Of a stretch of DNA of 64,000 nucleotides, positions 2,536-26,444 are shown piece after piece. The notes beneath the pieces were generated by a model that searched no databases, was not told the DNA's origin, and saw only the letters and a program-made list of their open reading frames with translations. Source of the DNA: Phallusia mammillata (taxonomy: Eukaryota); contig OZ281494.1 in assembly GCA_965637545.1 (NCBI GenBank), forward strand, positions 17,174,001 through 17,238,000, given 5' to 3'. Numbering within the stretch: position 1 is the stretch's first letter; the number at the start of each line of letters is the position of its first letter. A program made the position numbers and the translations under genes.

Positions 2536-5158
2536 TTAAACACCAAACTTTAAAATGGCTCTTCCTCTTATTTTTCCTTGTTTTACCAAGTCGATGGCAT
2601 CATTGACCTCGTCCAGGTCAAAGTATTGTAACGGTGGTGGTGTCAACTGCAATTAAAAGATGTTTAATACCACGACCATCTTGTTAGCAAGAAGAAGCCA
2701 AACAAGCAAGTTAATAAAATTGCCTTTTTTTCGGCCACCAACTCCATAAGTTCCTTCAACTGGTTTAAACTGCCAACGTGAATTCCTTGAATACGTTTTG
2801 AGTCCAGTGCGATCATGGGCAGAGAAAAGTTGGCTGCACCACCAAACAAACCAACCATGACTTGGATTCCAGACTGCAAAATGAAGTTAGCTTTTCTTAT
2901 AAATTTGCTATGTCGTTAGAGATACATATAGGCTTAGATTACAGTTTGTCTAAAAAAGTAAAGTTATTTGATGCCAATATGTTTATCGTATGGCACAAAA
3001 AGCTAATTCATTTGATATGTCTTGTATCTTTATACCACAAGAAAATTGAATAAAACCTTTTTTACTTTGGGAAATGGGCATTTTTATCCGTACTAAATTC
3101 TGTGTTGTTAGAGTATAGAATCAAACATTGTTATGCGAGGTTAACAATTACCGTTAACAAACAGTTAAACGCTCGTTCAGATGTGATCTTTGAGTTCACT
3201 AAGTCCACGACGGCATCGAATCCTCCGCGCAAGCCCTTTTCCTTTGTTGCTGCTACGACGTCATCTTCCACACAGTCACGTGACCACAAAACCGTGTCGT
3301 CACAACCACGTAATTTGGCTGTAGCCAATTTCTCTTCCTGTCGAATTTTTCCCTTACTGGATGGAGATGTGAAGAACATTTTATTCACTTACTGATATGT
3401 CGGCTATTATAATCTTCGTGTTACTTGGCAGAACAGCTTGAGCGATTTGTAAACACCAAAGACCCAAACCTCCCGCACCAACGATTAGTAGAGAAGCTTT
3501 ATCTGCAAAAGTAGAGCAAGGATAAAAAAGCAACTAAAAATAATACGTGACTTGATTATTATTACCGTTGTTGTGACGTAAAACAAACACTACAGTGCAT
3601 GTTATCGCTGCTATTTTGTTTATCAATGCTTTCAAACCTGTGATTTTAGTGCAGAGACATATACAATCATACCTTGAAACTTTAAGAGTGTTTCAATAAC
3701 CGGTTTTACGTGACTAACTGCGTTGTATGTTGTAACTCCCGCACAAGGCAACATGCAAGCAACGTCCAATGGCACCGCATCTGGAACGAGAATTGCTGAA
3801 CGAGCTTCTGGCACTACAACGTGACTCGCGTATCTGAAAGGAAACAATATTGCAAAAAGGTAGAAACGGTTTACAAACAGTAAAAGCACACTTTACTATT
3901 TGCTAAAGAAGGTTAGATTTTGTGCTTTTTATAGGTTTAAAAAGTGTAACATATGTTATCATGATGATGTATTGAAATCGAAGTTGTTTTACGAACAAGT
4001 TACATACGCATCATACCCGCCAGGAATTCCAAATCCGTAGCAGGTGTCTCTTACTGAGCAAAAGTTGCAGTTACCCTGATCACAAAAGCGACAAGAACCG
4101 CATCCTCTCCAGGGATAAATTGCAACTCGATCCCCAATCTTTAGTTTGCCTAGAATACATAAATTCTTGTCTTTAAGTTTCATGCAATAGTGGGGCCCTC
4201 CAAATGTGTAAAACTGCGTAGTGTTGAAATAAGTTAAATACCTTTCAGCTACATAATGTGAAAACATTTTGGACAAACCGTTGTTTTGCAAATCTGAGCC
4301 TATCGAGTGAACGATTCCAGACATCTCATGCCCTGGAGATATTGGCAACTTGTATTTTGGATTTGCGGAGTACCTTTTTTTCTCAAAACCGAAATCCACC
4401 TCATCTTTCAATTGGAGAATGTCCGAATGACAAATGCCACTGTAGGATATCTAAAAAATCTTTTTTTGTAGTACTGCGTGTAAAAATATGTAAAAAATAA
4501 ACGGACATAAAAAAACAGCTTTGGAATCGTTAATGCAGACCTACACATCAACGGTAAAACAACTAACACTGGAACTCAGGTGACGCCCGGTTTGGTAGGT
4601 GGCGCAACAGAGTATAGGCATTTATGGTGTCAGCACCCTAAACGCCTATGCTCCGTTGCGTCACTTACCAGAAATTCCCAGACCGGGCGTCAGCCAAATT
4701 GCAGTGTTGGTAGCTCTACCCACAACAACATTTAACTGTGACTAGCAACACATCTTGCATTCTCTGAATTTTTTGACATCTTTTTTATAATTTTATTTTT
4801 AATTGCATTTTTGTTTTGTTGTACGGATACAAAGCAAAGTGAAAAATGCATTTTATATGAGTCGGGTATCAGATCGGATATCAGTACTCTGTGTAAAAGT
4901 AGTGCTAGCCCTATAAAATACTATACCCTAAAAACAACTACAAAACATGTATAAAAGGTACACATTTTCAAAACCTAACACATTTGTCAGAAGTATCATT
5001 TGTTTGAAGTGATAGGCTACATGTAAACGTTTAAAAGTAATTATACGTTTTATAACAAATTATACCTTGACAACTAATCCGTGCCTCGGAGGATCCGGTA
5101 TGTCAGTTATGCAAACTTTCAATGCTTCCCGTAGTTTTACAATTTCTGCCTTCTTCAT
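2536..5158 (-). CDS. Zinc-dependent alcohol dehydrogenase A (MDR superfamily, 6-hydroxyhexanoate-DH/AdhP-like), 8 exons, 371 aa
   Basis: Exons 5158-5066, 4450-4279, 4149-4017, 3833-3673, 3502-3393, 3337-3152, 2873-2724, 2646-2536 join in frame (1116 nt). Motifs: GICHSD, GHE, structural Zn CGSCRFCDQGNCNFC, LPCAG, Rossmann GAGGLG, IIADIS, VGLFGG, GKIRGRAILKF. Last intron has a GC donor. Confidence 0.93.
4565..4708. repeat. 144-bp foldback (long imperfect inverted repeat) in ADH-A intron 1
   Basis: AACACTG..TGACGCCCGGTTTGG..TAGGTGGCGCAACAGAGTATAGGCATTTA pairs with TAAACGCCTATGCTCCGTTGCGTCACTTA..CCAGACCGGGCGTCA..CAGTGTT around a GGTG-TCAG-CACC apex. Confidence 0.8.
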
Positions 5159-7222: not shown

Positions 7223-10200
7223 TTAAATCTTAGCTTCATTAGTTTCCTTTGATGTTGTGGGAGAAATGGTGCCAAATTTTATAATTCCTCTCCCTTTCAT
7301 TTTCCCCTCGTCCATCATTTGTAAAGCTTCAGTTACTTCGTTCAGTTGAAAGTACTTGATGGGTGGTGGAACAATCTGACGGAATATTTGCGTTTAGTGT
7401 ATTTTGTAGAGATGTACCGAATATTCGGTTTGCCGAATTTATTCGGCCGAATCGGCCACTTTTGCAAAGATTCGGTTTCGGCCGAATAATTTGTTGCGAT
7501 TCGGCCGAAACCGAATCTTTTACGAACACCTATTTAAAGCGTTAAACGTGTCATTTCTGCTTAGTACCAACGGAAATCGCGTTTATCATTATATTTTGTA
7601 ACATACTGACACTTTTCCCACTGCAGACAAAAAAATCAGTATTTCATTGTCGGGTTGGCAATCATGCTTGAGGCGATGTAAACCCCACATAACGAAAATA
7701 AGGACGAAACACAACCATTCTGCACTAATTGCATGGTAGATAATCTTCTGTTTTCATGTCAAACGTGTAGGGTACGACTTTGTGTGACGTCATAAAAGAT
7801 TCGGTTGATTCGGCCGAATTTATTCGGCAAAACCGCCGAATATTCGGTTTCGGCCGAATCGAAATTTCGCTGATTCGGTACATCACTAGTATTTTGTTCC
7901 CGTTATTTACTGAAAAAAGTCTCGTGCGAAGCTTGTGGTTTTATAAAGTACGATTTGCTGTGAATAATCGATTTGGCTGATAATAACACATCGTTTTGTC
8001 ACAGATTTGTCACTTTTAAAAGAACGATGGTATGGTACTGATGTCATACGTTTCACCGAAATATTAGTAAAAGTTTTTTAGTTTATATTACAAAAGGCTG
8101 TGATCGCTTCACTTTTGACTGACCCGATGTTCTGTAAGCATTTGCAAAAGTTCACGCAAGTGGTCAATTTTTCCTGTGTACACTCCTCTGATCTTTTTCG
8201 AGTCCATAACCACCCGAGGAAGAGAGAGTTGCGCACCCCCTCCGAATAAACCAACCATGATAAGAATTCCATTCTGCAAATTAACATTTTGAAAACGCGG
8301 ATTATTCATTTACCTTTACCTACTAGTTAAAGAAGTTAGCAAACTTTAAAAAACTAAAAAAAATAAAGCCTCCCATTTTTTTGTAAACTGATTATAATCA
8401 GTATATATATAAATAATTATAAATAATTATTTATCATAGCTACGGTTTGTATTTTTAAGTTGTACATGAGTAAGGAACAGTGTAACATGTGCTACCTTTC
8501 TGAGACAGCCAAAATTTCTTTCGAATGTAGTTGTAGTGTTCACGAAGTCAACGATTGCGATGAATCCTTGTTTGCAGCAGCTCTTTTTGACTGTATCTTC
8601 CATGATCGTTTTTTCATCCTTGTCACGTGACCACAAAACTGTATCGTCACATCCGAGTTGGCGCGCCACTGCTAGCTTCTCCTCCTTACATAAGCCAGTG
8701 TAGCAACATGGGTTTGTAATATGATACAAATTTAGCTGTTGTACCAATTGGAATTTTATTTATGAATTGTCAAATTGAGCTTTGAAGCCAATGTCATGCA
8801 TGATTTTTTACAAGAAGAAAATCACCCCACTTAGTATCATATAAGCGCGGTTTGACGTGACAATTTGGTTTTTAAACTCTTCATTCCAACCTTTTGGCGT
8901 TGGCAGATAAGTAAACACGCTATCCCCTCCTACAGCTCGATAAAACATCTTTAGCTTGTGAACATTTTTGTATCTTGATTATGCAACATATACAATATGA
9001 ACTAGTATGCTTACAGCTACATCTGCGACAACGATTTTGGTCGTTTTTGGAAGCGATGCTCTACATATTTGTAAACACCACAAACCCAATGCACCAGCTC
9101 CAACGATCATCAGGCTTGCTTGACCTGGAAGGACACACGATTATTACGCCTAATATATCTGTATAAATGCTAAAACCAATGTTGTTCTATACCTGATCAT
9201 CTTTTTGTCTTAAAAAAATGGTTTTGCACTTACAACCAAATTTGCAGTACAACGCAAAATATCAAATTACCTTCAAATTCCGTGACCATCTCTACATCTG
9301 GCTTTGCAGCAGCCATAGCACTGTAAGCAGTTATACCGGAGCATGGTAACATGCAGGCAATTTCCATTGGGATAGAATCTGGCACTTTTACCACATAACG
9401 CTTATGTGGTACCTGCACATATGTAGCAAATCTAAAGAAAAACGTATAATCTATTCAAACCATGCACTCTTGTCTCTAAAGGGGGGATTTTTGCACAAAC
9501 AATTAATGATTTAAAACTTACTTAACCCTTTGCTTACCCTCCTGCAATAAGTAGACCGATGTACAGCCGTTTATCGCATATATTGGAACAATTTTTTATG
9601 CAGTACTGGCACTGTTGACATCCAATCCAGGGATAAACAACCACTCGATTATTGACCTGAAGATCGTCAGCTAAAGAAACATATCTGATTGATTTTTTTT
9701 CGAAATGATGTTGGTATGTTTGCTTGATGTATCACTAGTTTTTTTATAAGTAATTGCTTATGTAAAATATCAATTTTCTACGAAATACGTTGACTACTGT
9801 GAATACTGTAAATAGTTCTTACCACAGAAACTGGCCAATAAAGTTCCTTCGGGTATGTTTAATTGAACAATCTTTGCTGGCAGTTAAAGAAAGTAAAAAG
9901 CAAAAACATAATAAAGTGATGGAGTTTGCAAACTTACATGGTTTAATGTTATCTCCCAATGAATAAACTGTTCCTGATATTTCATGTCCAGCTACACCTT
10001 TGTACCCCGGAAAACTAGTAAATTTCAACACAGCCCCGCCCAAATCGATCTTGTCTTGCCATTGGTGGAGATCCGAATGACAAATTCCAGTGAAGGCGGT
10101 CTAAACATATCAGTAATGAAAATATACGGATATTTATAGCGACAGGAGCCTTACCAATTGCAACTGGTATAGACCACGGCAAACAAGCTCATGTCTCGGG

Positions 10201-11506
10201 TTCGAATCCCACCGCATGTTAATGTATACCTTGCAGCATGAAAATGCTTGTATTGATTCGCTATAACCCCACTAATATCCCTGACGTGTGGTTAATTTTT
10301 GAAATGAATCAGATAATGAATTGACAAACTTGTACAACAATAAAATCCAGCCGGTTTAACCGATGTCAAATAACTACCGTAGTTACCGAATAAACAACTA
10401 AACGAAACTATAGCAGCATATTCAACGTTGGTTCAACGTTGATTTCTAATGCGATTATGTAGCCATGTTTTCTGCTAACAAGTGAAACATGATCAAGTTA
10501 TTTAAAATAAACGTTTGCATTGGTAAATTTCAATAATCCCAAAGTGTATACCCTAAAATAATTTAAATCACATGCTATATTTTTTGCCAAAACAATCTGT
10601 TCCAGCAACTTCGTGTTCGTAGAAAATACATCGTGCATCCAATAACAGCTCAGGTGTTGGTTTAGTTTTACTTGTAGTAGGGACTTCAATTGTAATTGAT
10701 GAAAGTAAGACAAAATAAGGACTCAAGTTCAAAGCTAGTACATTTTAAAATAACAGCAATAAATTAGATATTGCCTTTCAAAGTAAGGATAAATCTTAGA
10801 AATAAGGACAGTATGGCAACCCTGGCTATAATATAGCTTTGATTCGTGTTTTGAGCCCCGAACACCCATTTATCCTGTACGAGAGTGTAGGTAATGTCAA
10901 GTTTACTTGTTCGTTGTACTTATCGAAAAATTAAATTTGGGTCTGCCGTGAGGTATGGTGTTGGTAGATTTTCAATTCTTAACTTCATCCTCACACTTTA
11001 CGTGGTTGTTTAAATTTTTTTGTTTTCTGTTGTTAGCATCCTACGAAGTTTTAATAGTGAATATTCTTAAAGTTTGACAGTAACAAAATGTAAACTTATG
11101 GAATTCCGGTATGACTATAGTTAGAAAGTATATGGGCCGTTTTTACCACAATCACGTATAGGCCTAATGTAAGTGCATGTAAAGCCTATCTTTGTCACAC
11201 CCCGCTGGTAAGTAAAAAAAATTAAATTAATAGGGTCAGAAATTTTAATGAAAGCTTTCTAATACAGAACAGATTCACTAAAAACAGGATAAAACCCAAT
11301 TACTGTTTTTGCATACCATCGTACACTAATTACTAGTCTTCTTATCTGCTACTATAATATACCTTGGTAAATCTTTATGATAACACCTTTACATTTTATA
11401 ATAGTGAACTTACCTTTACAATCAAACCATCAGGAGGTGGTGATGGAAGATCAATTTGCTCAATTTGCAGCGGTTCACTTGCTGTCACAATCCTTGCTTG
11501 CTCCAT
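7223..11506 (-). CDS. Zinc-dependent alcohol dehydrogenase B, 8 exons, 383 aa
   Basis: Exons 11506-11414, 10100-9938, 9670-9538, 9431-9271, 9124-9015, 8684-8496, 8273-8124, 7375-7223 join in frame (1152 nt). Motifs: GICHSD, DLGG, GHE, CQQCQYCIKNCSNIC, LPCSG, GAGALG, VVADVA. C-terminal extension ends EAKI. Confidence 0.93.
7407..7888. mobile_element. hAT MITE (TAGAGATG family), copy 1, in ADH-B intron 7
   Basis: TIR TAGAGATGTACCGAAT / ATTCGGTACATCACTA; subterminal CCGAAT/ATTCGG repeats; 8-bp TSD GTATTTTG at 7399-7406 and 7889-7896; homologous to 17172-17638. Confidence 0.92.
10160..10217 (+). repeat. Degenerate tRNA-derived SINE fragment
   Basis: B-box GGTTCGAATCC at 10199-10209 in the context GCTCATGTCTCGGGTTCGAATCCCACCGCA, shared with copies at 24302 and 24607; no cloverleaf. 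Confidence 0.5.
10716..10824. mobile_element. Single hAT-type terminus (TGGCAACCCTG) with AATAAGGAC subterminal repeats
   Basis: AATAAGGAC twice, then TATGGCAACCCTG (reverse complement of CAGGGTTGCCA); partner terminus and TSD not found. Confidence 0.35.
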
Positions 11507-12788: not shown

Positions 12789-15700
12789 CTATTCAAATTT
12801 GATTACGCCTCGCCCTTTCATCTTTCCTTGATCCATCAGTTTGTACGCATCGTTCACCTCCTCCAGGCGAAAGAATTTTATGGGCGGCGAAACAATCTAA
12901 ACACAATAGTTAAATGAAAAACACGGTTAAAAAATGTTTCGGTTTAAATCACGACATTCAAAAACATTACAGAGTGGCCTGTTTTGGCATTTTTACCAAT
13001 TAAAAATGTAAAAAAAAACATTCGCAATCTGTAGGTTTTCTTTAGACTGAAGTTATAGATTGCATTATAAATAATTGGATGTTAGCATGCATATATTCAT
13101 ATAGTTACATATTTTACTACGCCGCGTTGGTTTGATAGGCAGATATTACAAAAAACTGATTTGTTTTGAACTAAAATGAATGCTGCATTATACCTGGTGC
13201 TTAGACATCATTGCAAGTAGCTCTTCCAAGTGTTGACGCCTTCCAGTGTACACACCCCTTATCTGTTTTGAACCGAAAACTGTCTTCGGAAGAGAAAGCT
13301 TCGCCCCACCACCAAACAACCCAACCAAAGCCATTACTCCGTTCTAATAATTCCAAGAGAAACATTCGAGTTTTAATACATGTATAATACGGGGAGCAGA
13401 AACTGAGGCTACATACAGTCAATGATAATAACATTCAAGCAACAAGCGATAATTCAATCGATAGGATATTTTCAAGTACCTTGCATAAACAGTTAAACCC
13501 GCGCTCGAAAGTGACTGTGGTGTTGACGAAATCTATGATTCCGTTGAACCCGTCTTTTCTCAAACTTTTGCTTTTCGTTCTTTCGACTAACACGCTCTCT
13601 TTTTCGTCACGTGACCACAGAACAGTGTCGTCACAGCCGAGGTCTTTTGCCACCGACAATTGACCTTCCTTTTAAAACGAAAGGGCACAAACGCTTTAAG
13701 GTAATATTTATTGCAAATAGTTTAAGACATAAAGATGGCTGTCATGTTTTGCAATAATGAATCAATTTTACTACTGCAGCCACGTAAGAAAATAAGAAAC
13801 TTAAAAAAGTGAACAAAACAATGCTTGCAGCTGGCATTTTAGTACCACAGTAGAAAATGTTGGAAGTGTAGTATTTGATTTAGACTGAGTTTTTTTATTA
13901 AAGCCAATGTTAAGTTAATAACTAAACTTACCGAAACATCAGCCAAAATAATTTTCGTGGTTTTGGGAAAAGTAGCTCTGCAGATTTGAAGGCACCACAG
14001 ACCTAAGCCCCCAGCTCCAACAATCATCAAGCTGGCTTTTCCTACACGTAAGCAACATGTAAATGAAATTGTTATTTTCAAAGTCTATTTTAAAACTCTA
14101 AACGCTAAAGGCGTTTTATTTAGTGTACATATGTTAACTTTGGTATTCAGAAGAATATTTCTAAAACTCTGATAACACTAAGACTTAGAAATGTTACATG
14201 TGTTTCATGGTTATGTTACATTCAATGCATTGCGATGGGGGTCCATGCAAATAATTTCCGGTAACTGGAACAAGATTTTACTTGTTCTTTCAAACCACAA
14301 GGTACTACACTGACCCTCAAATTCCGTCGCACTCTCTATCTCTTGTTTGGCTGCAGTCATTGCGTTGTAAGCCGTGATCCCTGAGCAAGCAAGCAAACAC
14401 GCAATTTCCATCGGAACTGATTCCGAGACTTTTAATGCATACTTTGAGTGTGGAAGAAGCACAAAAGTGGAGTATCTGTGTAGTAAACGTTTTTTTCTTA
14501 ACTAACAGTGATTGTAATAGGCTTTTTCTAGTAACTATTAAATGTGTGATAGACTTATAAATGTACCCATTTTGGCCACCCAGCACCTGCGGCAAATCTT
14601 TTTCGCGTAATTGTATTTCGGCTGATCTTTGGTTTGATTTGACAAGTATCAGTTAAGTGTTGGTAATTTTTTCTTTGTAATAATTCTAAAACAATATGAA
14701 AACAAAACCACAACGCAAAGTAACACAACGTTGTGAAGTCGCCTCAAATTTACATGAAATATTATAGAATACCTTTAAATATAATTTGATACCAAATCTA
14801 CGGCTGAATGTGATTAATTTGTGGTTTAAGTAATTTATCATGCGGTTTTACACAAGTTTGCACCAAAAAAGTTGTAATTTTGATTTTGAAAGGCGCGTTA
14901 AATTTCATAGGACGCGCGTTGAGCAAACACATGACGTCCATGAAAATCTTATCAATAGTCAACAATACAAGTCTTGATTTACGTTCTTGCTATTTTGCAA
15001 CGTTGTCAAACAACGGCAAGCGAAAGGAAGCTCAGACCGCAAGTTTGTGTTTGTGGCAAATATTTGTCTCATGTTCCTTGTGTTCCGGTGTCTGGGACAA
15101 ACTTCGACTGGCGCCCACTTTGGTTGAGTTGTGGCAATCTACAGTGATATAGGGTAGGCGTGGCGATCACGTGACCCAACTATACGTGAACTGCTATAAG
15201 CGGGCGAGCGTTACACACAGAGTCAGTAGAATATCCCGAAAAGCTTCTTTTTGACAAAACTATAATAAAGTAAAGCGGGCGGGAATAGGCTAAACTTTTT
15301 CCTCTTAAATGTACACTTTAAATATACTTCTCAAAACTTACGGACTGCGGACTTAAAAAAGGCAGTTTCAGAAGATTAATTTATCCTAATAATGTGTAGT
15401 TTTTGCACACTGACCCTCCGTAATGGTCATATCCGATGTTGGATCGAACGTCGCACATGTTAGGACAACCCTTCAAGCAGTAGCCGCACTTCTTGCATCC
15501 CATCCAAGGATAAACCACCACGCGGTCTCCGACCTTCAAAACGCCCTCTGCCAACCATAATCACTAAGTGTTTAGTCAACATCATTGTGGAACAATAGAG
15601 GCACTGAACGTGTATTATGAAAGCGACACGACAAAATTGGCACAGTTTGAACAAAACTCTTTTCACGTATAACTGACATTCCCATCTTACTGGAGAAACC

Positions 15701-16431
15701 CATTTTGTCCCTTTGAACATGTGAAGCACGTCACAACGGTTTCTATATGACAAGGTTTAAGTCATGGCCACGTTGTGTTTGCAAACACTCTACATCGCGT
15801 TTGCAAAATCGTACACTCGCACGAAAATTTGTTATATGTTTGAAAAATACCCAAAATAATCGCAAACACGTCGTACCACCTGTTGCAGGCAGTATTGGTT
15901 TTGCTGCGGTTGCATGACCCTGTTTGCCACTGACGTCTCACCTTTTGCCACGTTTTCACCCATTGCATAGACGTGGCCAGCAACCTCATGGCCAGGAACG
16001 GCCTTGTAATTTGGGTTTGTTGAAACACGAAATATCTCCCCGCCCAAGTCGATTCTGTCCTTCCAGTGGTTCATATCAGAGTGACACATTCCACTATACG
16101 CTGACTGGAATTACATCAGACAAACATTTTTCCAAAATTTAGTTGGCCCTTTCATTTGCACTTTTCAAAGTGTTCTTGGCGAATTATAGTGAAATAATGC
16201 TATTAATATATATTTTTGTGATAAATGCATACAATGAGTATCTAATTTTAGTGTTTACTGGTGTCTTTTTGCATTTGAGCCAAAAGTTTGCACGAAAAAT
16301 TGATATTTATTGCAGATGACCTTATTTTAAAATTTTACCTTTACGACAAGGCCATCCGCTGGTGGAACAGGAATGTCCAATTCTTCAAATTCGAACGGTT
16401 CGTTATGCTTTACAATCTTTGCCCTCTTCAT
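12789..16431 (-). CDS. Zinc-dependent alcohol dehydrogenase C, 8 exons, 368 aa
   Basis: Exons 16431-16339, 16104-15942, 15547-15415, 14475-14315, 14041-13932, 13668-13480, 13343-13194, 12896-12789 join in frame (1107 nt). Motifs: GMCHSD, DLGG, GHE, CKKCGYCLKGCPNMC, LACSG, GAGGLG, ILADVS. Confidence 0.93.
15168..15227 (+). promoter_or_regulatory. Candidate E-box + TATA + Inr core promoter, antisense within ADH-C intron 3
   Basis: CACGTG 15168-15173, TATAAG 15195-15200, TCAGT Inr with its A at 15225 (TATA at -30). Confidence 0.35.
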
Positions 16432-21365: not shown

Positions 21366-24300
21366 ATGTACCGAGCTCAATTAGTAAAACCCAATGAGCC
21401 TTTGGTTTTCAGTGAAACAGCAATACCCGATGCTCCGGATGGGGGAATCGTTGTGAAAGTATGTCAAAACAAAAACAGCGATTATCAAACAAGCTACATG
21501 CACAATTTATGTCCCCAAAACAACGTAAAAAAGAAATATCTCTATAAAGTAAAGTGGAATTCGAAAACGTACTTTTTACTTTACATTTGTTAATTTAAAC
21601 ACGCTGCAAGATTCGAAACATACTTGCTCGGATTTAAAACCAATAAATTCCATACAATCTGCTACCATAAGTGTAGTTGTGAAAAAAGTTAGGATTTCTT
21701 TTCGAAACCAACTATAGTTTAAAGAAATAGTTTTACCAACATACTACAAAGTTTTTTCTCAGACAAAGTTTACTGGAATTTGCGCATCCGATATAATGAT
21801 GTGGGGTGATGTTGTGTCACTTGGCGAAGGGGTTTCAATTAATCTATCCGATTTCTTTTACAAATTTCCGATAACTTTTGGTCACGAAATTGCCGGCATC
21901 GTCTATTCCATTGGAAAAAAACAACCAGCAGGTATTTTTAAAGAATTTTATTTTCAAACTGTTTTGCGACCACCCTGTCCTTATGTGTTTACTTTTAGGA
22001 TCTGACTTTAATGTGGCCGACAAAGGTTTAACCAATATGTTACAATGTTTTTTCTTAGACAAAGTTTACTGAAATTTGCGCGTCCGAATTTTATTTTCAA
22101 GCATTTTTAGCAACTACCCTGTCCTCGTGTGATTACTTTCAGGATCTGCTCTTAACCTGGGAGACCCTGTGGTTGTATACTCCTGCAGGGGCTGCAACAC
22201 CTGTGGATATTGTGCCCAGTATGCACCAAATAAATGCGCCAAAAGACTAGGAGGAAATTACGGAATAGGTACACCAGGAGGGTAGGTGTTTGTCAGAAAT
22301 TGTGCTTTTTTAAAAGTAATGCACACAAAAGATATGAATATAATTTTGAACCTATATTTTTTGCAACTTGTAGCTACGCCACGTTCGTCAGCGTGTTTAA
22401 TGCTCAAGATGTACTGAAGTTACCTGATGTTGTTCCACTTGAAGTCGGATGTATGTTGGGCTGTGCGGGTTTGACCAGTTATGGCGCATTAGATTCGATC
22501 AAGCCACTTTTGGAAAATATTGTTAAACTTGAAGGTAAAATGATCATTTGTTCTTTGACGCAAAATTGTCATGGAGAGTACATTCCCATTTAAAAACGGA
22601 CATGTGCTCTTCAAGGCTTCACATCAGTCATTGAAATCATACTAAATTTATCGTAAAAGAATACAAAAATGGCCCAATTGGGCTTAAGCCGTTTAATTGT
22701 TTGTTTTATTGTATAATCGGTGGCCGGACAACGGATAATTAGGTTTTGGTTTAAAGTAAACGGGTTGTTCTCACAATGCCCGTCTTCAAACTGCCTGAAT
22801 TTATGCAAATTGGTAAAAAAAAGATTGATTGTTTTCCGACTTGGAGTTGGTGGCTTTAACACAGTTCAGCTCATAGTTACACTGGGTTAAAGCAATGTCA
22901 CCAATGTTTCTTACTTACGAAAACGCAAGTGTTCAGGATTAGAATAAAACCGTAGCCGTTGCGCCAAACACTCAGTCATCTTTTTGTAGCGTTTATATGC
23001 TGCTAAATCGGTTGACACTTTTAGGTAGAGTACTTTATTTGCAAAACCTATTGTATCAGATTGCCAGTGGCAAAATGTGTCTTTATGAAGCGTTTTCAAC
23101 CCGAACTTTAATTGAAAGGAGAAACCAGTTTACTGATTACGTCAACTGGCGGACTAAGCGCCTGGTGCTACCAAATTGCAAGAGCTTTTTTACCGAAAAA
23201 GACTAAGATTGTCATCAGCAGTACATCCGTAAGTTATACTATTTCTCTTACCTTTGTTCAAGTGGTTTATAACTTTTTTAGTCAAACAACTTTTTCATAA
23301 ATTTATCAGGTTTGTGCTAACCCATAGACAAATACCTCTTTTAAAACCTTAATTTATGTCGGCAAACCCCAGGTTAGGAACCACTGCTTTAGCCCCTTAC
23401 ATAGGCTGTGGTAGTTACAGTAAATTATTGACTAGTGCACACAGTATTTACAAAACGCCTTTCAACAAACTTGGTTTACTACAGGAAGGACGACTTGAGC
23501 GGTTTTGCAAAATTCATCGTTGCGATGACAAGGTGCTTTGGAAAGATGGCGCAAGTGTTGCAGATTTGGTTGCTCTAACCAAGGAAAAAGGTTTGAACGG
23601 AGGTTTCGATGCAGTGTTGGATATGGTCGGTACACCTCAAAGCACCAACATCGCTTACCAGAGCCTTCGACCGGTAAACAAATAAACACATTTATATTGA
23701 TCAGTTTGCTTCATGGCGTCTTTTGCCCCTTATCCCTTTGGCGATGTTTCGTATCGCCTTACCTTCTTAAAGCAAAGTTACAAAAGGAAATAATAAACAT
23801 GTTTTGTGCCGCTTGTTTACCAATGACAGTTAAGTGCATATAAGAGATATACCTGATTTCAATATTAATAAAATTGTTTGGCTTCTTATTTACAGGTTTC
23901 CGTGTAATTAACCTATCAGGCGCCACTGCTTTTTAGCCTAATTTTTTAAATAAGCTCATATCAATGCAAGATATTTTTGTCATGCTCTACGGCTGTGTTT
24001 ATGTGAATCAGAACACATACGATATATTTAGAATGGAACGATGGTGATGGTTGGACTTCGAGGTGGAACCGGAAGTTATCCAGCGCCTGACATATCAATG
24101 TGGTCAAAAGAAATCAAAGGGAGTTTGATGGGATCTCGTGAACAGCTGAAGAAATTGATCACGCTAGTTGCTGAGAACAAGGTCAGAATTGACTGTAATT
24201 AAAATAGTTCTGCTTAAAATAATATTCCACAGTGGGCATTTATGTAAGGTGGTAGTTATTTTGTTAAAGTAAATCTGACAAGAAATAGTCCAAAAAAATC

Positions 24301-24958
24301 TAGCCTGCGGTGGAATTCGTACCCACAACAGGAGCTATTTCCGCGACTCGTGCGCTAATAATTGAGCCACACAGGTTTAGTGAAAGCCCGTCGAAAGTCG
24401 AATCACATTGCCTGTGTCGTATACTGCATATGCCAGCTCGTAGTTGGGGATCGCCAGTTTGACCATTCATCCGTTAAGATGAACATTAATTCAAAACAGA
24501 GATTAGAAGCGTTCATGCAGCGATCACCGCACACTGATATGCATATCATAGCAAGTCAGGCATATTGACTTACTGTCGAATTTGTACACCGAAAGAAGCC
24601 ACAGGCCAAACAATGCAGTGGGATTCGAACCCCCGGGCCCCGACAGAAGCCTTTTCAGGACTCGCCTTTTACCAAGTGAGCTACTGAACGTGATCGCTGG
24701 GTAACATAAATGGCAATTTTAGAGCTGATTTCAGTTTTGAATATGTTCATCTTAAGACGGTTGAGTATTATCAAAATGATTTTCCTATTACAACGATCCA
24801 AAACGCAAGAGAACATAAATACTCTCTTATTAAAATTTATTTTGTTACAGATGACTTGTCCACCAATCAGTTATTTCAAACTTGACGAAATAAACGAAGC
24901 ACTCGAACTGCAGAAAAAAGGAAAAATTGAAGGGCGAGCCATCATACAATTCGACTAA
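21366..24958 (+). CDS. Zinc-dependent alcohol dehydrogenase D (divergent coenzyme site), 8 exons, 372 aa
   Basis: Exons 21366-21458, 21763-21931, 22143-22281, 22374-22534, 23119-23228, 23485-23673, 24032-24181, 24851-24958 join in frame (1119 nt) with the same intron phases as A-C. Zn ligands retained (GICASD, GHE, CNTCGYCAQYAPNKC, LGCAG), but the Rossmann motif reads STGGLS and the Asp position reads ISSTS. Confidence 0.92.
24302..24378 (-). repeat. tRNA-derived SINE head (degenerate)
   Basis: Minus strand GTGTGGCTCAATTATTAGC...GTGGGTACGAATTCCACCGCA: A-box-like and B-box-like motifs, stems not intact. Confidence 0.55.
24607..24692 (-). repeat. tRNA-derived SINE head
   Basis: Minus strand TAGCTCACTTGGTAAAAGGC...GGGGGTTCGAATCCCACTGCA: clear A and B boxes but the acceptor stem does not pair. 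Confidence 0.6.
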
Positions 24959-25050: not shown

Positions 25051-26444
25051 TAGGGGGAGATGTGGGACCATTGGGCCAAAATTCAGTTTTTCATGACTAT
25101 TTCTTTGAGTTCGAAAGAAAAATTTGAACACCTGTAGTAATACTACACGTTTTAACACACTTACACAAGGGCATAACTTTCTTATTTGGAAATGCGTTGG
25201 CAAGATATTCCGTTTTAAAAATTACAAAAAATATGGCTCAAAGGTCCTTACCCTTGGGGACCATTGAGCCTCGCATAAAGGACTTTTGGGCCAGTATTTT
25301 CATGTGATATGGACCATTAATCCACGCATGAGGGAGCTTATTAAGTGTTGTGTTTGAAAGTACTGTAGAACAATTTTATTGAAAAAGAAATCTAATAGTA
25401 ATCAAAAGAACGAAATACAACCAGCATCAATAGCTTTATAGGCCCACAAATACAAGAAATCACTTTTTTTTCAATGTATTTTTCGACAATCAGGCGACAG
25501 TCCGAGAACTGAAAATTGCCCTTTGTCGTTCACGGGGTTCGAGCCCAGGATACCCCGGGGACGAATCCCGATCAGGTTTTTTATGCCTGTATGTGGGTCA
25601 GGCGCGCCAGGCCATTCGGCCAAGTTCCCGCCCAAATCACAGTTCACAAGTCATAACTGCTTAAGTTAGGGGTTGATGTAGATTTCGCCTCTTTGATGTA
25701 TCTTTGTTGCACGAGGAATGTTGTTGCTGAAAGCGGCTTCTCGGGTGCTACATTTTTTATCCAAAACTTCTTGAACAGCTTTTCTCAAGCTAGAGTCAGT
25801 ATAATGTCTATACTTTTCTTTATTTTTTTTTAAAGTAGGCATTTGATATAGGTTATATAATTTACTAGACTAATATCAGACTCTATTGATATAACAATTC
25901 ATTTGTGTAAAGGTTTTTGACAGTTTAATATGCAACATAAATACATAGGCCCAACACAAAAATTCATACTTAAAACCCACAAGCACAACGCATGTATTAA
26001 CGCTATTAAGGTATAAAGTCAAAGGACCTTTGGGCCATGCCCAATGGTCCTGTGAACAACTGGTCCAATGGTCCTGTATTGCCACCATTACGAACTTATC
26101 TGATTAAACTACGTTACACAGATCAACTTAAGAAATACTAATGCTCATCTAACGCTACAATTGACTAACTAATATCCTGCAAAGTTTGTGTTTTAACTAG
26201 CTTTCTCTTGTAAAGAAATTACAAAAATGTAAAGGAGTAAAATATTTACTTTCAAGCTGCGAAAACTTAGTTATGCTCACAGTTTCTTCTGTAAGTGACT
26301 GACCTTCTTGCTGTTACAGCTTTAAAACTCTTGCAACACAAGTACTTTAACGCATGATTGAGAACTCGTTACAGCGACCAGTTTGAGAGAAACGCATGAT
26401 GGCCCAAAGGTCCTTCATGCTCAATGGTCCCGCATCTCCCCCTA
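25051..26444. mobile_element. Non-autonomous TIR element of about 1.39 kb (TA-flanked pogo/Fot1-like, or a 4-bp-TSD family)
   Basis: TIR TAGGGGGAGATGTGGGACCATTG / CAATGGTCCCGCATCTCCCCCTA; subterminal GGACCATTG repeats at both ends. Flanks can be read as TSD TA (element 25053-26442) or ACTT (element 25052-26443). No transposase ORF; contains a SINE-like insert. Confidence 0.8.
25518..25632 (-). repeat. tRNA-like SINE fragment, second family
   Basis: Minus strand GGGAACTTGGCCGAATGG (A-box-like)...GGGCTCGAACCCC; a diverged related copy lies at about 28416-28510. Confidence 0.45.

What the first reader, a model, noticed from the sequence alone, without database searches (positions are those of the whole stretch)
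21781..23228. ADH-D has coordinated changes across the dinucleotide-binding site: cofactor switch or pseudo-enzyme
Seen: all catalytic and structural Zn ligands are kept, but three coenzyme-contact positions differ from A-C: CHSD to CASD (21781-21792), GAG(G/A)LG to STGGLS, and the NAD-specifying Asp (AD[IV]x) to SSTS (exon 5), followed by EGRLER. Known: this Asp excludes the 2'-phosphate; NADP-dependent MDRs such as cinnamyl alcohol DH have ISTS-like sequence there, and NADP folds often replace the last fingerprint Gly with a small residue. Inference: the inverted paralog became an NADPH-dependent reductase, or a Zn-binding non-catalytic subunit. The frame and splice sites are intact, suggesting selection.
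Basis: partly seen in the sequence, partly recalled or inferred. Interest (0 to 1): 0.7.

Follow-up and report, generated by a model that had tools for sequence, protein, structure and literature searches.

The report
Sea-squirt ADH paralog with NADP-type pocket
One of four neighbouring zinc alcohol-dehydrogenase genes in a sea squirt is intact, transcribed and correctly spliced, but its cofactor pocket has changed in the way that normally makes such enzymes prefer NADPH over NAD, a known kind of switch after gene duplication that here still lacks a biochemical test.

Summary
The window holds four 8-exon paralogs of a zinc medium-chain alcohol dehydrogenase. A, B and C lie on the minus strand and D lies head-to-head on the plus strand (21366-24958, 372 aa).

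D keeps every catalytic and structural zinc ligand. It reads C-A-S-D where the others read C-H-S-D, S-T-G-G-L-S where they read G-A-G-G/A-L-G, and S-S-T-S where they read A-D-I/V-x. Outgroups show that all three changes arose on the D lineage.

D is not decaying. A 1282-nt assembled transcript with no mismatches joins exactly the eight predicted exons. D's protein branch is no longer than its paralogs' branches. D branches before relatives found in another species, so it is old.

D's unique changes are about three times enriched in the exon that encodes the dinucleotide fold (Fisher p=0.035).

D has Ser-Thr where NAD enzymes have Asp plus a hydrophobic residue, and Ala at position 47. This matches published rules for NADP-dependent medium-chain dehydrogenases, including frog ADH8. 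I therefore read D as an active reductase that prefers NADP(H) or uses both cofactors (confidence 0.55).

The S..S variant of the glycine fingerprint is unusual. No D ortholog was found, and D could not be folded here. This is an ordinary kind of evolution and a new example of it.

The parts
21366..21458 (+). D exon 1 (start codon, residues 1-31)
   Evidence: ORF and GT donor. Joined to exon 2 in the RNA contig.
21763..21931 (+). D exon 2. It holds C38-A39-S40-D41 (21781-21792) and G-H-E (residues 71-73).
   Evidence: Pfam ADH_N E=3e-6.
22143..22281 (+). D exon 3, the structural-zinc lobe with Cys105, 108, 111 and 119
   Evidence: Pfam ADH_N E=0.0015.
22374..22534 (+). D exon 4, with the catalytic zinc ligand Cys164 in L-G-C-A-G
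23119..23228 (+). D exon 5, strand beta-1, helix A and strand beta-2 of the dinucleotide fold. It holds S-T-G-G-L-S (196-201) and S-S-T-S (221-224).
   Evidence: It has no PDB match even at E<=10, whereas the same exon of A finds Sulfolobus ADH. Eight of 18 family-invariant columns are changed.
23485..23673 (+). D exon 6. It begins E-G-R-L-E-R (R227 lies five residues after the Asp column) and holds D-M-V-G-T.
   Evidence: Pfam ADH_zinc_N.
24032..24181 (+). D exon 7, with V-G-L-R-G-G (F297R)
   Evidence: Pfam ADH_zinc_N E=8.7e-6.
24851..24958 (+). D exon 8 and stop codon
2536..5158 (-). Paralog A (371 aa; CHSD, GAGGLG, ADIS)
7223..11506 (-). Paralog B (383 aa; CHSD, GAGALG, ADVA)
12789..16431 (-). 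Paralog C (368 aa; CHSD, GAGGLG, ADVS)

Best explanation
D is an old, transcribed and selectively maintained paralog in a sea-squirt cluster of zinc medium-chain alcohol dehydrogenases. The nearest solved structures to this family are the Sulfolobus ADH and arabinose-dehydrogenase group.

D's catalytic machinery is intact. The pocket that reads the adenosine ribose of the cofactor has been rebuilt. The Asp that binds the 2'/3'-hydroxyls of NAD and repels a 2'-phosphate is now Ser222. The hydrophobic residue after it is now Thr223, followed by Ser224. Arg227 and Arg230 lie at the start of the next helix. The pyrophosphate-contacting His39 is now Ala.

D most likely works as an aldehyde/ketone reductase that prefers NADP(H) or uses both cofactors, while A, B and C stay NAD(H)-dependent.

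Shown: the sequence changes, their derived polarity, the intact frame, splicing and expression. Inferred: the cofactor preference and the direction of catalysis.
For: - The gene model and motifs are confirmed.
- Run X1 holds a 1282-nt contig with no mismatches that joins all eight exons at the predicted GT..AG sites.
- Bacterial outgroups and Sulfolobus ADH carry H, GxGGxG and Asp at the three sites, so D's states are derived.
- D is sister to all other family members, including three paralogs from another species. Its root-to-tip length is 0.80, against 0.50-1.11 for the others.
- dN between D and A-C is 0.52-0.62, with dS saturated.
- D-unique changes are enriched in exon 5, 8/18 against 13/68, p=0.035.
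- Published rule: the position equivalent to D's S222 is small and uncharged in NADPH enzymes and always acidic in NADH enzymes, and the next position is V/I/L only in NADH enzymes. The paper's NADPH set includes 2H6E and its NADH set includes 1JVB, both among the nearest solved relatives here (PMC4498498).
- Frog ADH8 is NADP-dependent through Gly223-Ser/Thr224-Gln/His225 and has Gly47 (PMC4028059).
- There is no second, canonical exon 5 hidden in D's introns.
Against: - No biochemical or structural test was possible. The spliced protein has no reference, so it could not be folded or searched full-length.
- The first and third fingerprint glycines are both Ser. That is not the usual NADP signature (GxGxxA) and might weaken binding of any dinucleotide.
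- The Arg five residues after the Asp column is Lys in A and B, so it is not specific to D.
- Glu225 and Glu229 lie close by.
- No D-type ortholog was found, so conservation of S-T-S across species is unknown.
- D transcripts appeared in only one of four runs laid.
- Enzymes with Ser at this site often still use NADH (PMC13146661).
Confidence: 0.55

Rival explanations
1. D is still an NAD(H) enzyme, or an inefficient dual-cofactor enzyme, with weaker and faster-exchanging coenzyme binding. On this reading, the loss of His39 and Asp222 tunes turnover or substrate range rather than switching the cofactor.
For: Small residues at position 47 are linked to lower coenzyme affinity and higher kcat in vertebrate ADHs (PMC4028059). 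A paralog in another species has Gly at this position and still keeps the Asp (t3). Ser-type medium-chain dehydrogenases accept NADH (PMC13146661). From memory, unverified here: a single Asp-to-Gly change in yeast ADH gives low-efficiency use of both cofactors.
Against: Two consecutive positions changed together in the NADP direction, Asp to Ser and Ile/Val to Thr (PMC4498498). In the published set, NADH enzymes were acidic at this site without exception.
Confidence: 0.25
2. D is a non-catalytic, zinc-binding subunit that joins A-C in mixed tetramers, or has another non-enzymatic role.
For: Only the central glycine of the fingerprint remains. Exon 5 of D has no PDB match even at E<=10, while exon 5 of A matches Sulfolobus ADH. 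Further D-only changes lie next to the nicotinamide loop (F297R).
Against: All catalytic residues are kept: C38, S40, D41, H72, E73 and C164. A protein that no longer needed them would be expected to lose some over such a long history.
Confidence: 0.12
3. D is a decaying duplicate (a young pseudogene) whose open frame survives by chance.
For: D has the most family-unique substitutions (21 of 86). A partly duplicated scrap of exons 2 and 3 sits in intron 2.
Against: The frame is open over 372 codons with seven canonical introns. The mRNA is spliced, with no mismatches. D diverged early and its branch length lies within the family range. dN is far below the saturated dS. At some positions D keeps outgroup-like states that A-C have lost (L-G-C, V-G).
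Confidence: 0.03

Closest known systems
Frog ADH8 (class VIII, NADP-dependent vertebrate alcohol dehydrogenase)
   Same: Both are tandem-duplicate zinc ADHs that became NADP-type by replacing Asp223 and the two residues after it with small or hydroxyl residues. Both have a small residue at position 47 (PMC4028059).
   Different: ADH8 belongs to a different medium-chain subfamily, the class I-derived dimeric ADHs. It keeps the GxGxxG fingerprint and its triad is G-T/S-H/Q, not S-T-S. Its cofactor use has been measured; D's has not.
Sulfolobus NAD-dependent ADH (1JVB, 1R37, 2EER) and Sulfolobus D-arabinose dehydrogenase (2H6E)
   Same: These are the best solved-structure matches for exons 5 and 7 of the family. 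They share the long insert between C-H-S-D and G-H-E and the M-V-G-L-F-G motif. Between them they show both cofactor types, 1JVB using NADH and 2H6E NADPH (PMC4498498).
   Different: The matches are exon-level only and weak (E 0.006-0.45). These are archaeal, intron-less enzymes. Full-length identity could not be measured.
Plant cinnamyl/sinapyl alcohol dehydrogenases and yeast ADH6/7 (CAD family, NADPH)
   Same: They are zinc medium-chain dehydrogenases that use NADPH (PMC2792335). Exon 4 of D finds them among its top PDB matches. From memory, they carry a Ser-rich stretch followed by Lys at the same place.
   Different: They keep the glycine fingerprint and belong to a different subfamily. 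The motif identity rests on memory and was not checked with a tool here.

Membership tests
Zinc-containing medium-chain dehydrogenase/reductase (Pfam ADH_N + ADH_zinc_N) | ADH_N (GroES-like) domain | tested here: met
   Exon 2 scores 27.8 bits (cut-off 23.5, E=3e-6). Exon 3 adds 19.2 bits.
Zinc-containing medium-chain dehydrogenase/reductase (Pfam ADH_N + ADH_zinc_N) | ADH_zinc_N (Rossmann) domain | tested here: inconclusive
   Only single exons could be scanned. Exon 7 scores 26.2 bits and exon 6 scores 15.9 bits, each below the 31.8 cut-off on its own. They cover adjacent parts of the profile, positions 46-81 and 82-128.
Zinc-containing medium-chain dehydrogenase/reductase (Pfam ADH_N + ADH_zinc_N) | Catalytic zinc ligands (Cys, His/Glu, Cys) and the four-Cys structural zinc site | tested here: met
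   C38, H72/E73 and C164, plus C105, C108, C111 and C119. All are aligned with A-C and with the bacterial outgroups.
NAD(H)-dependent medium-chain ADH | Acidic residue at the end of beta-2 followed by V/I/L | tested here: not met
   D has S222-T223. A-C and all outgroups have Asp followed by a hydrophobic residue or Pro. The rule is from PMC4498498.
NAD(H)-dependent medium-chain ADH | GxGxxG fingerprint | tested here: not met
   D reads S-T-G-G-L-S; only the central Gly is kept.
NADP(H)-dependent medium-chain dehydrogenases (functional class) | Small uncharged residue in place of the Asp, and a non-hydrophobic residue after it | tested here: met
   S222 and T223. The rule is from PMC4498498. 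The ADH8 triad is described in PMC4028059.
NADP(H)-dependent medium-chain dehydrogenases (functional class) | Basic side chain placed to bind the 2'-phosphate | tested here: inconclusive
   R227 and R230 follow the Ser stretch. However, A and B also have Lys at the R227 column, and no structure could be made.
NADP(H)-dependent medium-chain dehydrogenases (functional class) | Measured preference for NADP(H) | not testable with these tools
   This needs enzyme kinetics.
Pseudogene | Stops, frameshifts, broken splice sites or no transcript | tested here: not met
   The frame is open, the introns are canonical, and a spliced transcript contig exists.

The most novel reading that the evidence does not exclude
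D represents an old tunicate lineage of an archaeal-type zinc dehydrogenase whose dinucleotide fold has lost two of its three fingerprint glycines. It might bind neither cofactor productively and instead act as a regulatory or scaffolding partner in mixed tetramers with A-C. Alternatively it might bind a different nucleotide-like ligand.
Probability: 0.1. Interest if true: 0.6.

Novelty: new member of a known kind. Interest (0 to 1): 0.35.

Why it matters
If confirmed, D would be an independent natural case of a cofactor switch after tandem duplication in a zinc alcohol dehydrogenase, parallel to frog ADH8 and the plant CAD family. It would also be in a subfamily that has not been studied in animals.

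The cluster would then offer matched NAD-type and NADP-type enzymes from one locus. That is useful for understanding which residues set cofactor choice, including an unusual S-x-G-x-x-S fingerprint. It would also hint that sea squirts split oxidative and reductive carbonyl metabolism between neighbouring genes.

It does not change any general principle.

Tried and rejected
- Full-length searches, Pfam scans, PDB searches and structure prediction of D were not possible. The protein is spliced from eight exons and has no reference, and long sequences may not be typed. Everything remote was done exon by exon, and full-length work was done locally.
- An exhaustive search of the 1.84-billion-protein representative library (one per 50%-identity cluster) with exon 6 found only four exon-sized fragments, all A-C-like.
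- Word-based searches with the open frames containing exon 5 and exon 4 found nothing.
- A metagenome scan found ten loci from another species carrying three paralogs, all with the Asp. Further fragments from Logan and TARA contigs were also A-C-like. No D ortholog turned up.
- A scan of prokaryotic genomes returned only distant medium-chain dehydrogenases of 27-30% identity (one pair over half the protein reaches 32%). They served as outgroups and not as close relatives.
- An alignment scaffolded on a bacterial protein plus exon pieces was badly misaligned and was dropped.
- A hidden alternative exon 5 was looked for and not found.
- dN/dS for D could not be computed because dS is saturated.
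- No tRNA or Rfam match was found around D.
- A recent paper on horizontally transferred genes in tunicates does not list this family.

Full report
**What is there**

The window is intron-bearing animal DNA at about 38% GC. I did not test that.

A tblastn of the assembled D protein against the window shows four paralogous genes with identical exon structure:
- A at 2536-5158, B at 7223-11506 and C at 12789-16431, all on the minus strand.
- D at 21366-24958 on the plus strand, head-to-head with C.

D has eight exons with GT..AG introns and encodes 372 residues without a stop. [quoted passage not shown]

**The observation**

C-A-S-D is encoded at 21781-21792, and exon 5 ends at 23228 with S-S-T-S.

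In the four-way alignment:
- D has Ala39 where A-C have His.
- D has S-T-G-G-L-S (196-201) where A-C have G-A-G-G/A-L-G.
- D has S-S-T-S (221-224) where A-C have A-D-I/V-x. Ser222 sits in the Asp column.
- The next residues in D are E-G-R-L-E-R.

All zinc ligands are kept: C38, H72/E73 and C164, plus C105, C108, C111 and C119.

Bacterial medium-chain dehydrogenases used as outgroups carry H, G-x-G-G-x-G and Asp at these places, as does Sulfolobus ADH. All three D states are therefore derived.

**Is it more than chance?**

I added paralogs from a second species recovered from metagenome contigs. D differs at 21 of 86 columns that are invariant in every other member. Any other member differs at only 4-10 of about 70 such columns.

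Eight of D's 21 changes lie in exon 5, which encodes strand beta-1, helix A and strand beta-2 of the dinucleotide fold. That is 8 of 18 invariant columns against 13 of 68 elsewhere (odds ratio 3.4, Fisher p=0.035). The clustering is real but modest, because D is also diverged elsewhere (F297R in V-G-L-F-G-G, Y-P-W to Y-S-C, G236R).

Exon 5 of D finds no solved structure even at E<=10. Exon 5 of A finds Sulfolobus ADH.

**Is D alive?**

Yes.
- Run X1 holds a 1282-nt assembled contig with no mismatches. It joins the eight exons exactly at the predicted junctions and carries short untranslated ends. Three other runs showed no D transcript, so expression may be restricted or low.
- In a maximum-likelihood tree rooted with bacterial relatives, D is sister to all other members, including the second species' paralogs. 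Support for the monophyly of that non-D clade is moderate (67.7/68). D's root-to-tip length (0.80) lies inside the family range of 0.50-1.11.
- dN between D and A-C is 0.52-0.62 while dS is saturated.
- At some sites D keeps outgroup-like residues that the A-C clade has lost (L-G-C, V-G).

An old copy with an open frame, intact splicing and no rate acceleration is under purifying selection. The pseudogene reading is very unlikely.

There is no second, canonical exon 5 in D's introns, so this is not an either-or exon system.

**What the changes mean**

The family's nearest solved structures, at exon level and with weak E-values, are:
- Sulfolobus NAD-dependent ADH (1JVB, 1R37, 2EER);
- Sulfolobus D-arabinose dehydrogenase (2H6E).

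A published structure-based comparison used these very entries, with 2H6E among the NADPH enzymes and 1JVB among the NADH enzymes. It found that the residue at the end of beta-2 is small and uncharged in NADPH enzymes and exclusively acidic in NADH enzymes. It also found that the next residue is V/I/L in NADH enzymes (PMC4498498).

A-C have Asp followed by Ile or Val. D has Ser followed by Thr.

Frog ADH8 is a tandem-duplicate ADH that became NADP-dependent. It uses Gly223-Ser/Thr224-Gln/His225 to hold the 2'-phosphate and has Gly47 (PMC4028059). D's Ala39 is the same position.

The best reading is therefore an active reductase that prefers NADP(H) or uses both cofactors.

**Cautions**
- Both outer fingerprint glycines are Ser. 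This is not a standard NADP signature and could weaken any dinucleotide binding.
- The Arg five residues after the Asp column is not unique to D.
- A paralog of the other species has Gly at position 47 and keeps the Asp, so that change alone says little.
- CAD-type enzymes that prefer NADPH still accept NADH (PMC13146661).

**What could not be done**

The spliced protein has no reference, so it could not be folded, docked, or searched full-length.

No D-type ortholog was found. Neither the conservation of the new pocket nor a branch-specific dN/dS could be measured.

**Verdict**

The rival readings are an NAD-using or dual-cofactor enzyme (about 0.25), a pseudo-enzyme (about 0.12) and a decaying pseudogene (about 0.03).

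This is a new example of a well-known evolutionary move, in an animal enzyme family that has not been characterised. Its interest is moderate to low until an assay is done.

Noticed in passing
window 21730-22165: Intron 2 of D holds a partial tandem duplication. A copy of the end of intron 1 plus the first ~29 bases of exon 2 lies at 22026-22087 (87% identical). The start of exon 3 with its acceptor is present twice, at 21962-22021 and 22106-22165 (77%). The transcript contig skips the decayed copies.
   Followed up: partly
window 2722-2724: Intron 7 of paralog A appears to use a GC donor (AAG|GCAAT) instead of GT. All other introns of A-D are GT..AG. No RNA evidence was obtained for A.
   Followed up: no
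window 7223-7270: Paralog B has a C-terminal tail about 15 residues longer than those of A, C and D.
   Followed up: no
L013-L015 (metagenome contigs), exon 2: One paralog of the second species reads G-I-C-G-S-D (Gly at position 47) and G-G-G-G-L-G, but keeps the Asp at the end of beta-2. This is an independent loss of His47 without a change at the ribose site.
   Followed up: partly
window 24294-24334 and 25054-25093: Short stretches in intron 7 and in the 3' untranslated region of D are matched by unrelated contigs from several runs, with loose ends on both sides. They are probably dispersed repeats. No tRNA or Rfam match was found.
   Followed up: partly
L001-L015, L024-L026: The same intron-bearing dehydrogenase family turns up in contigs from JGI and ENA metagenomes, in Logan run assemblies and on a TARA Oceans scaffold. 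Other marine eukaryotes therefore carry it. No full-length annotated protein of the family was found in the protein libraries searched.
   Followed up: partly
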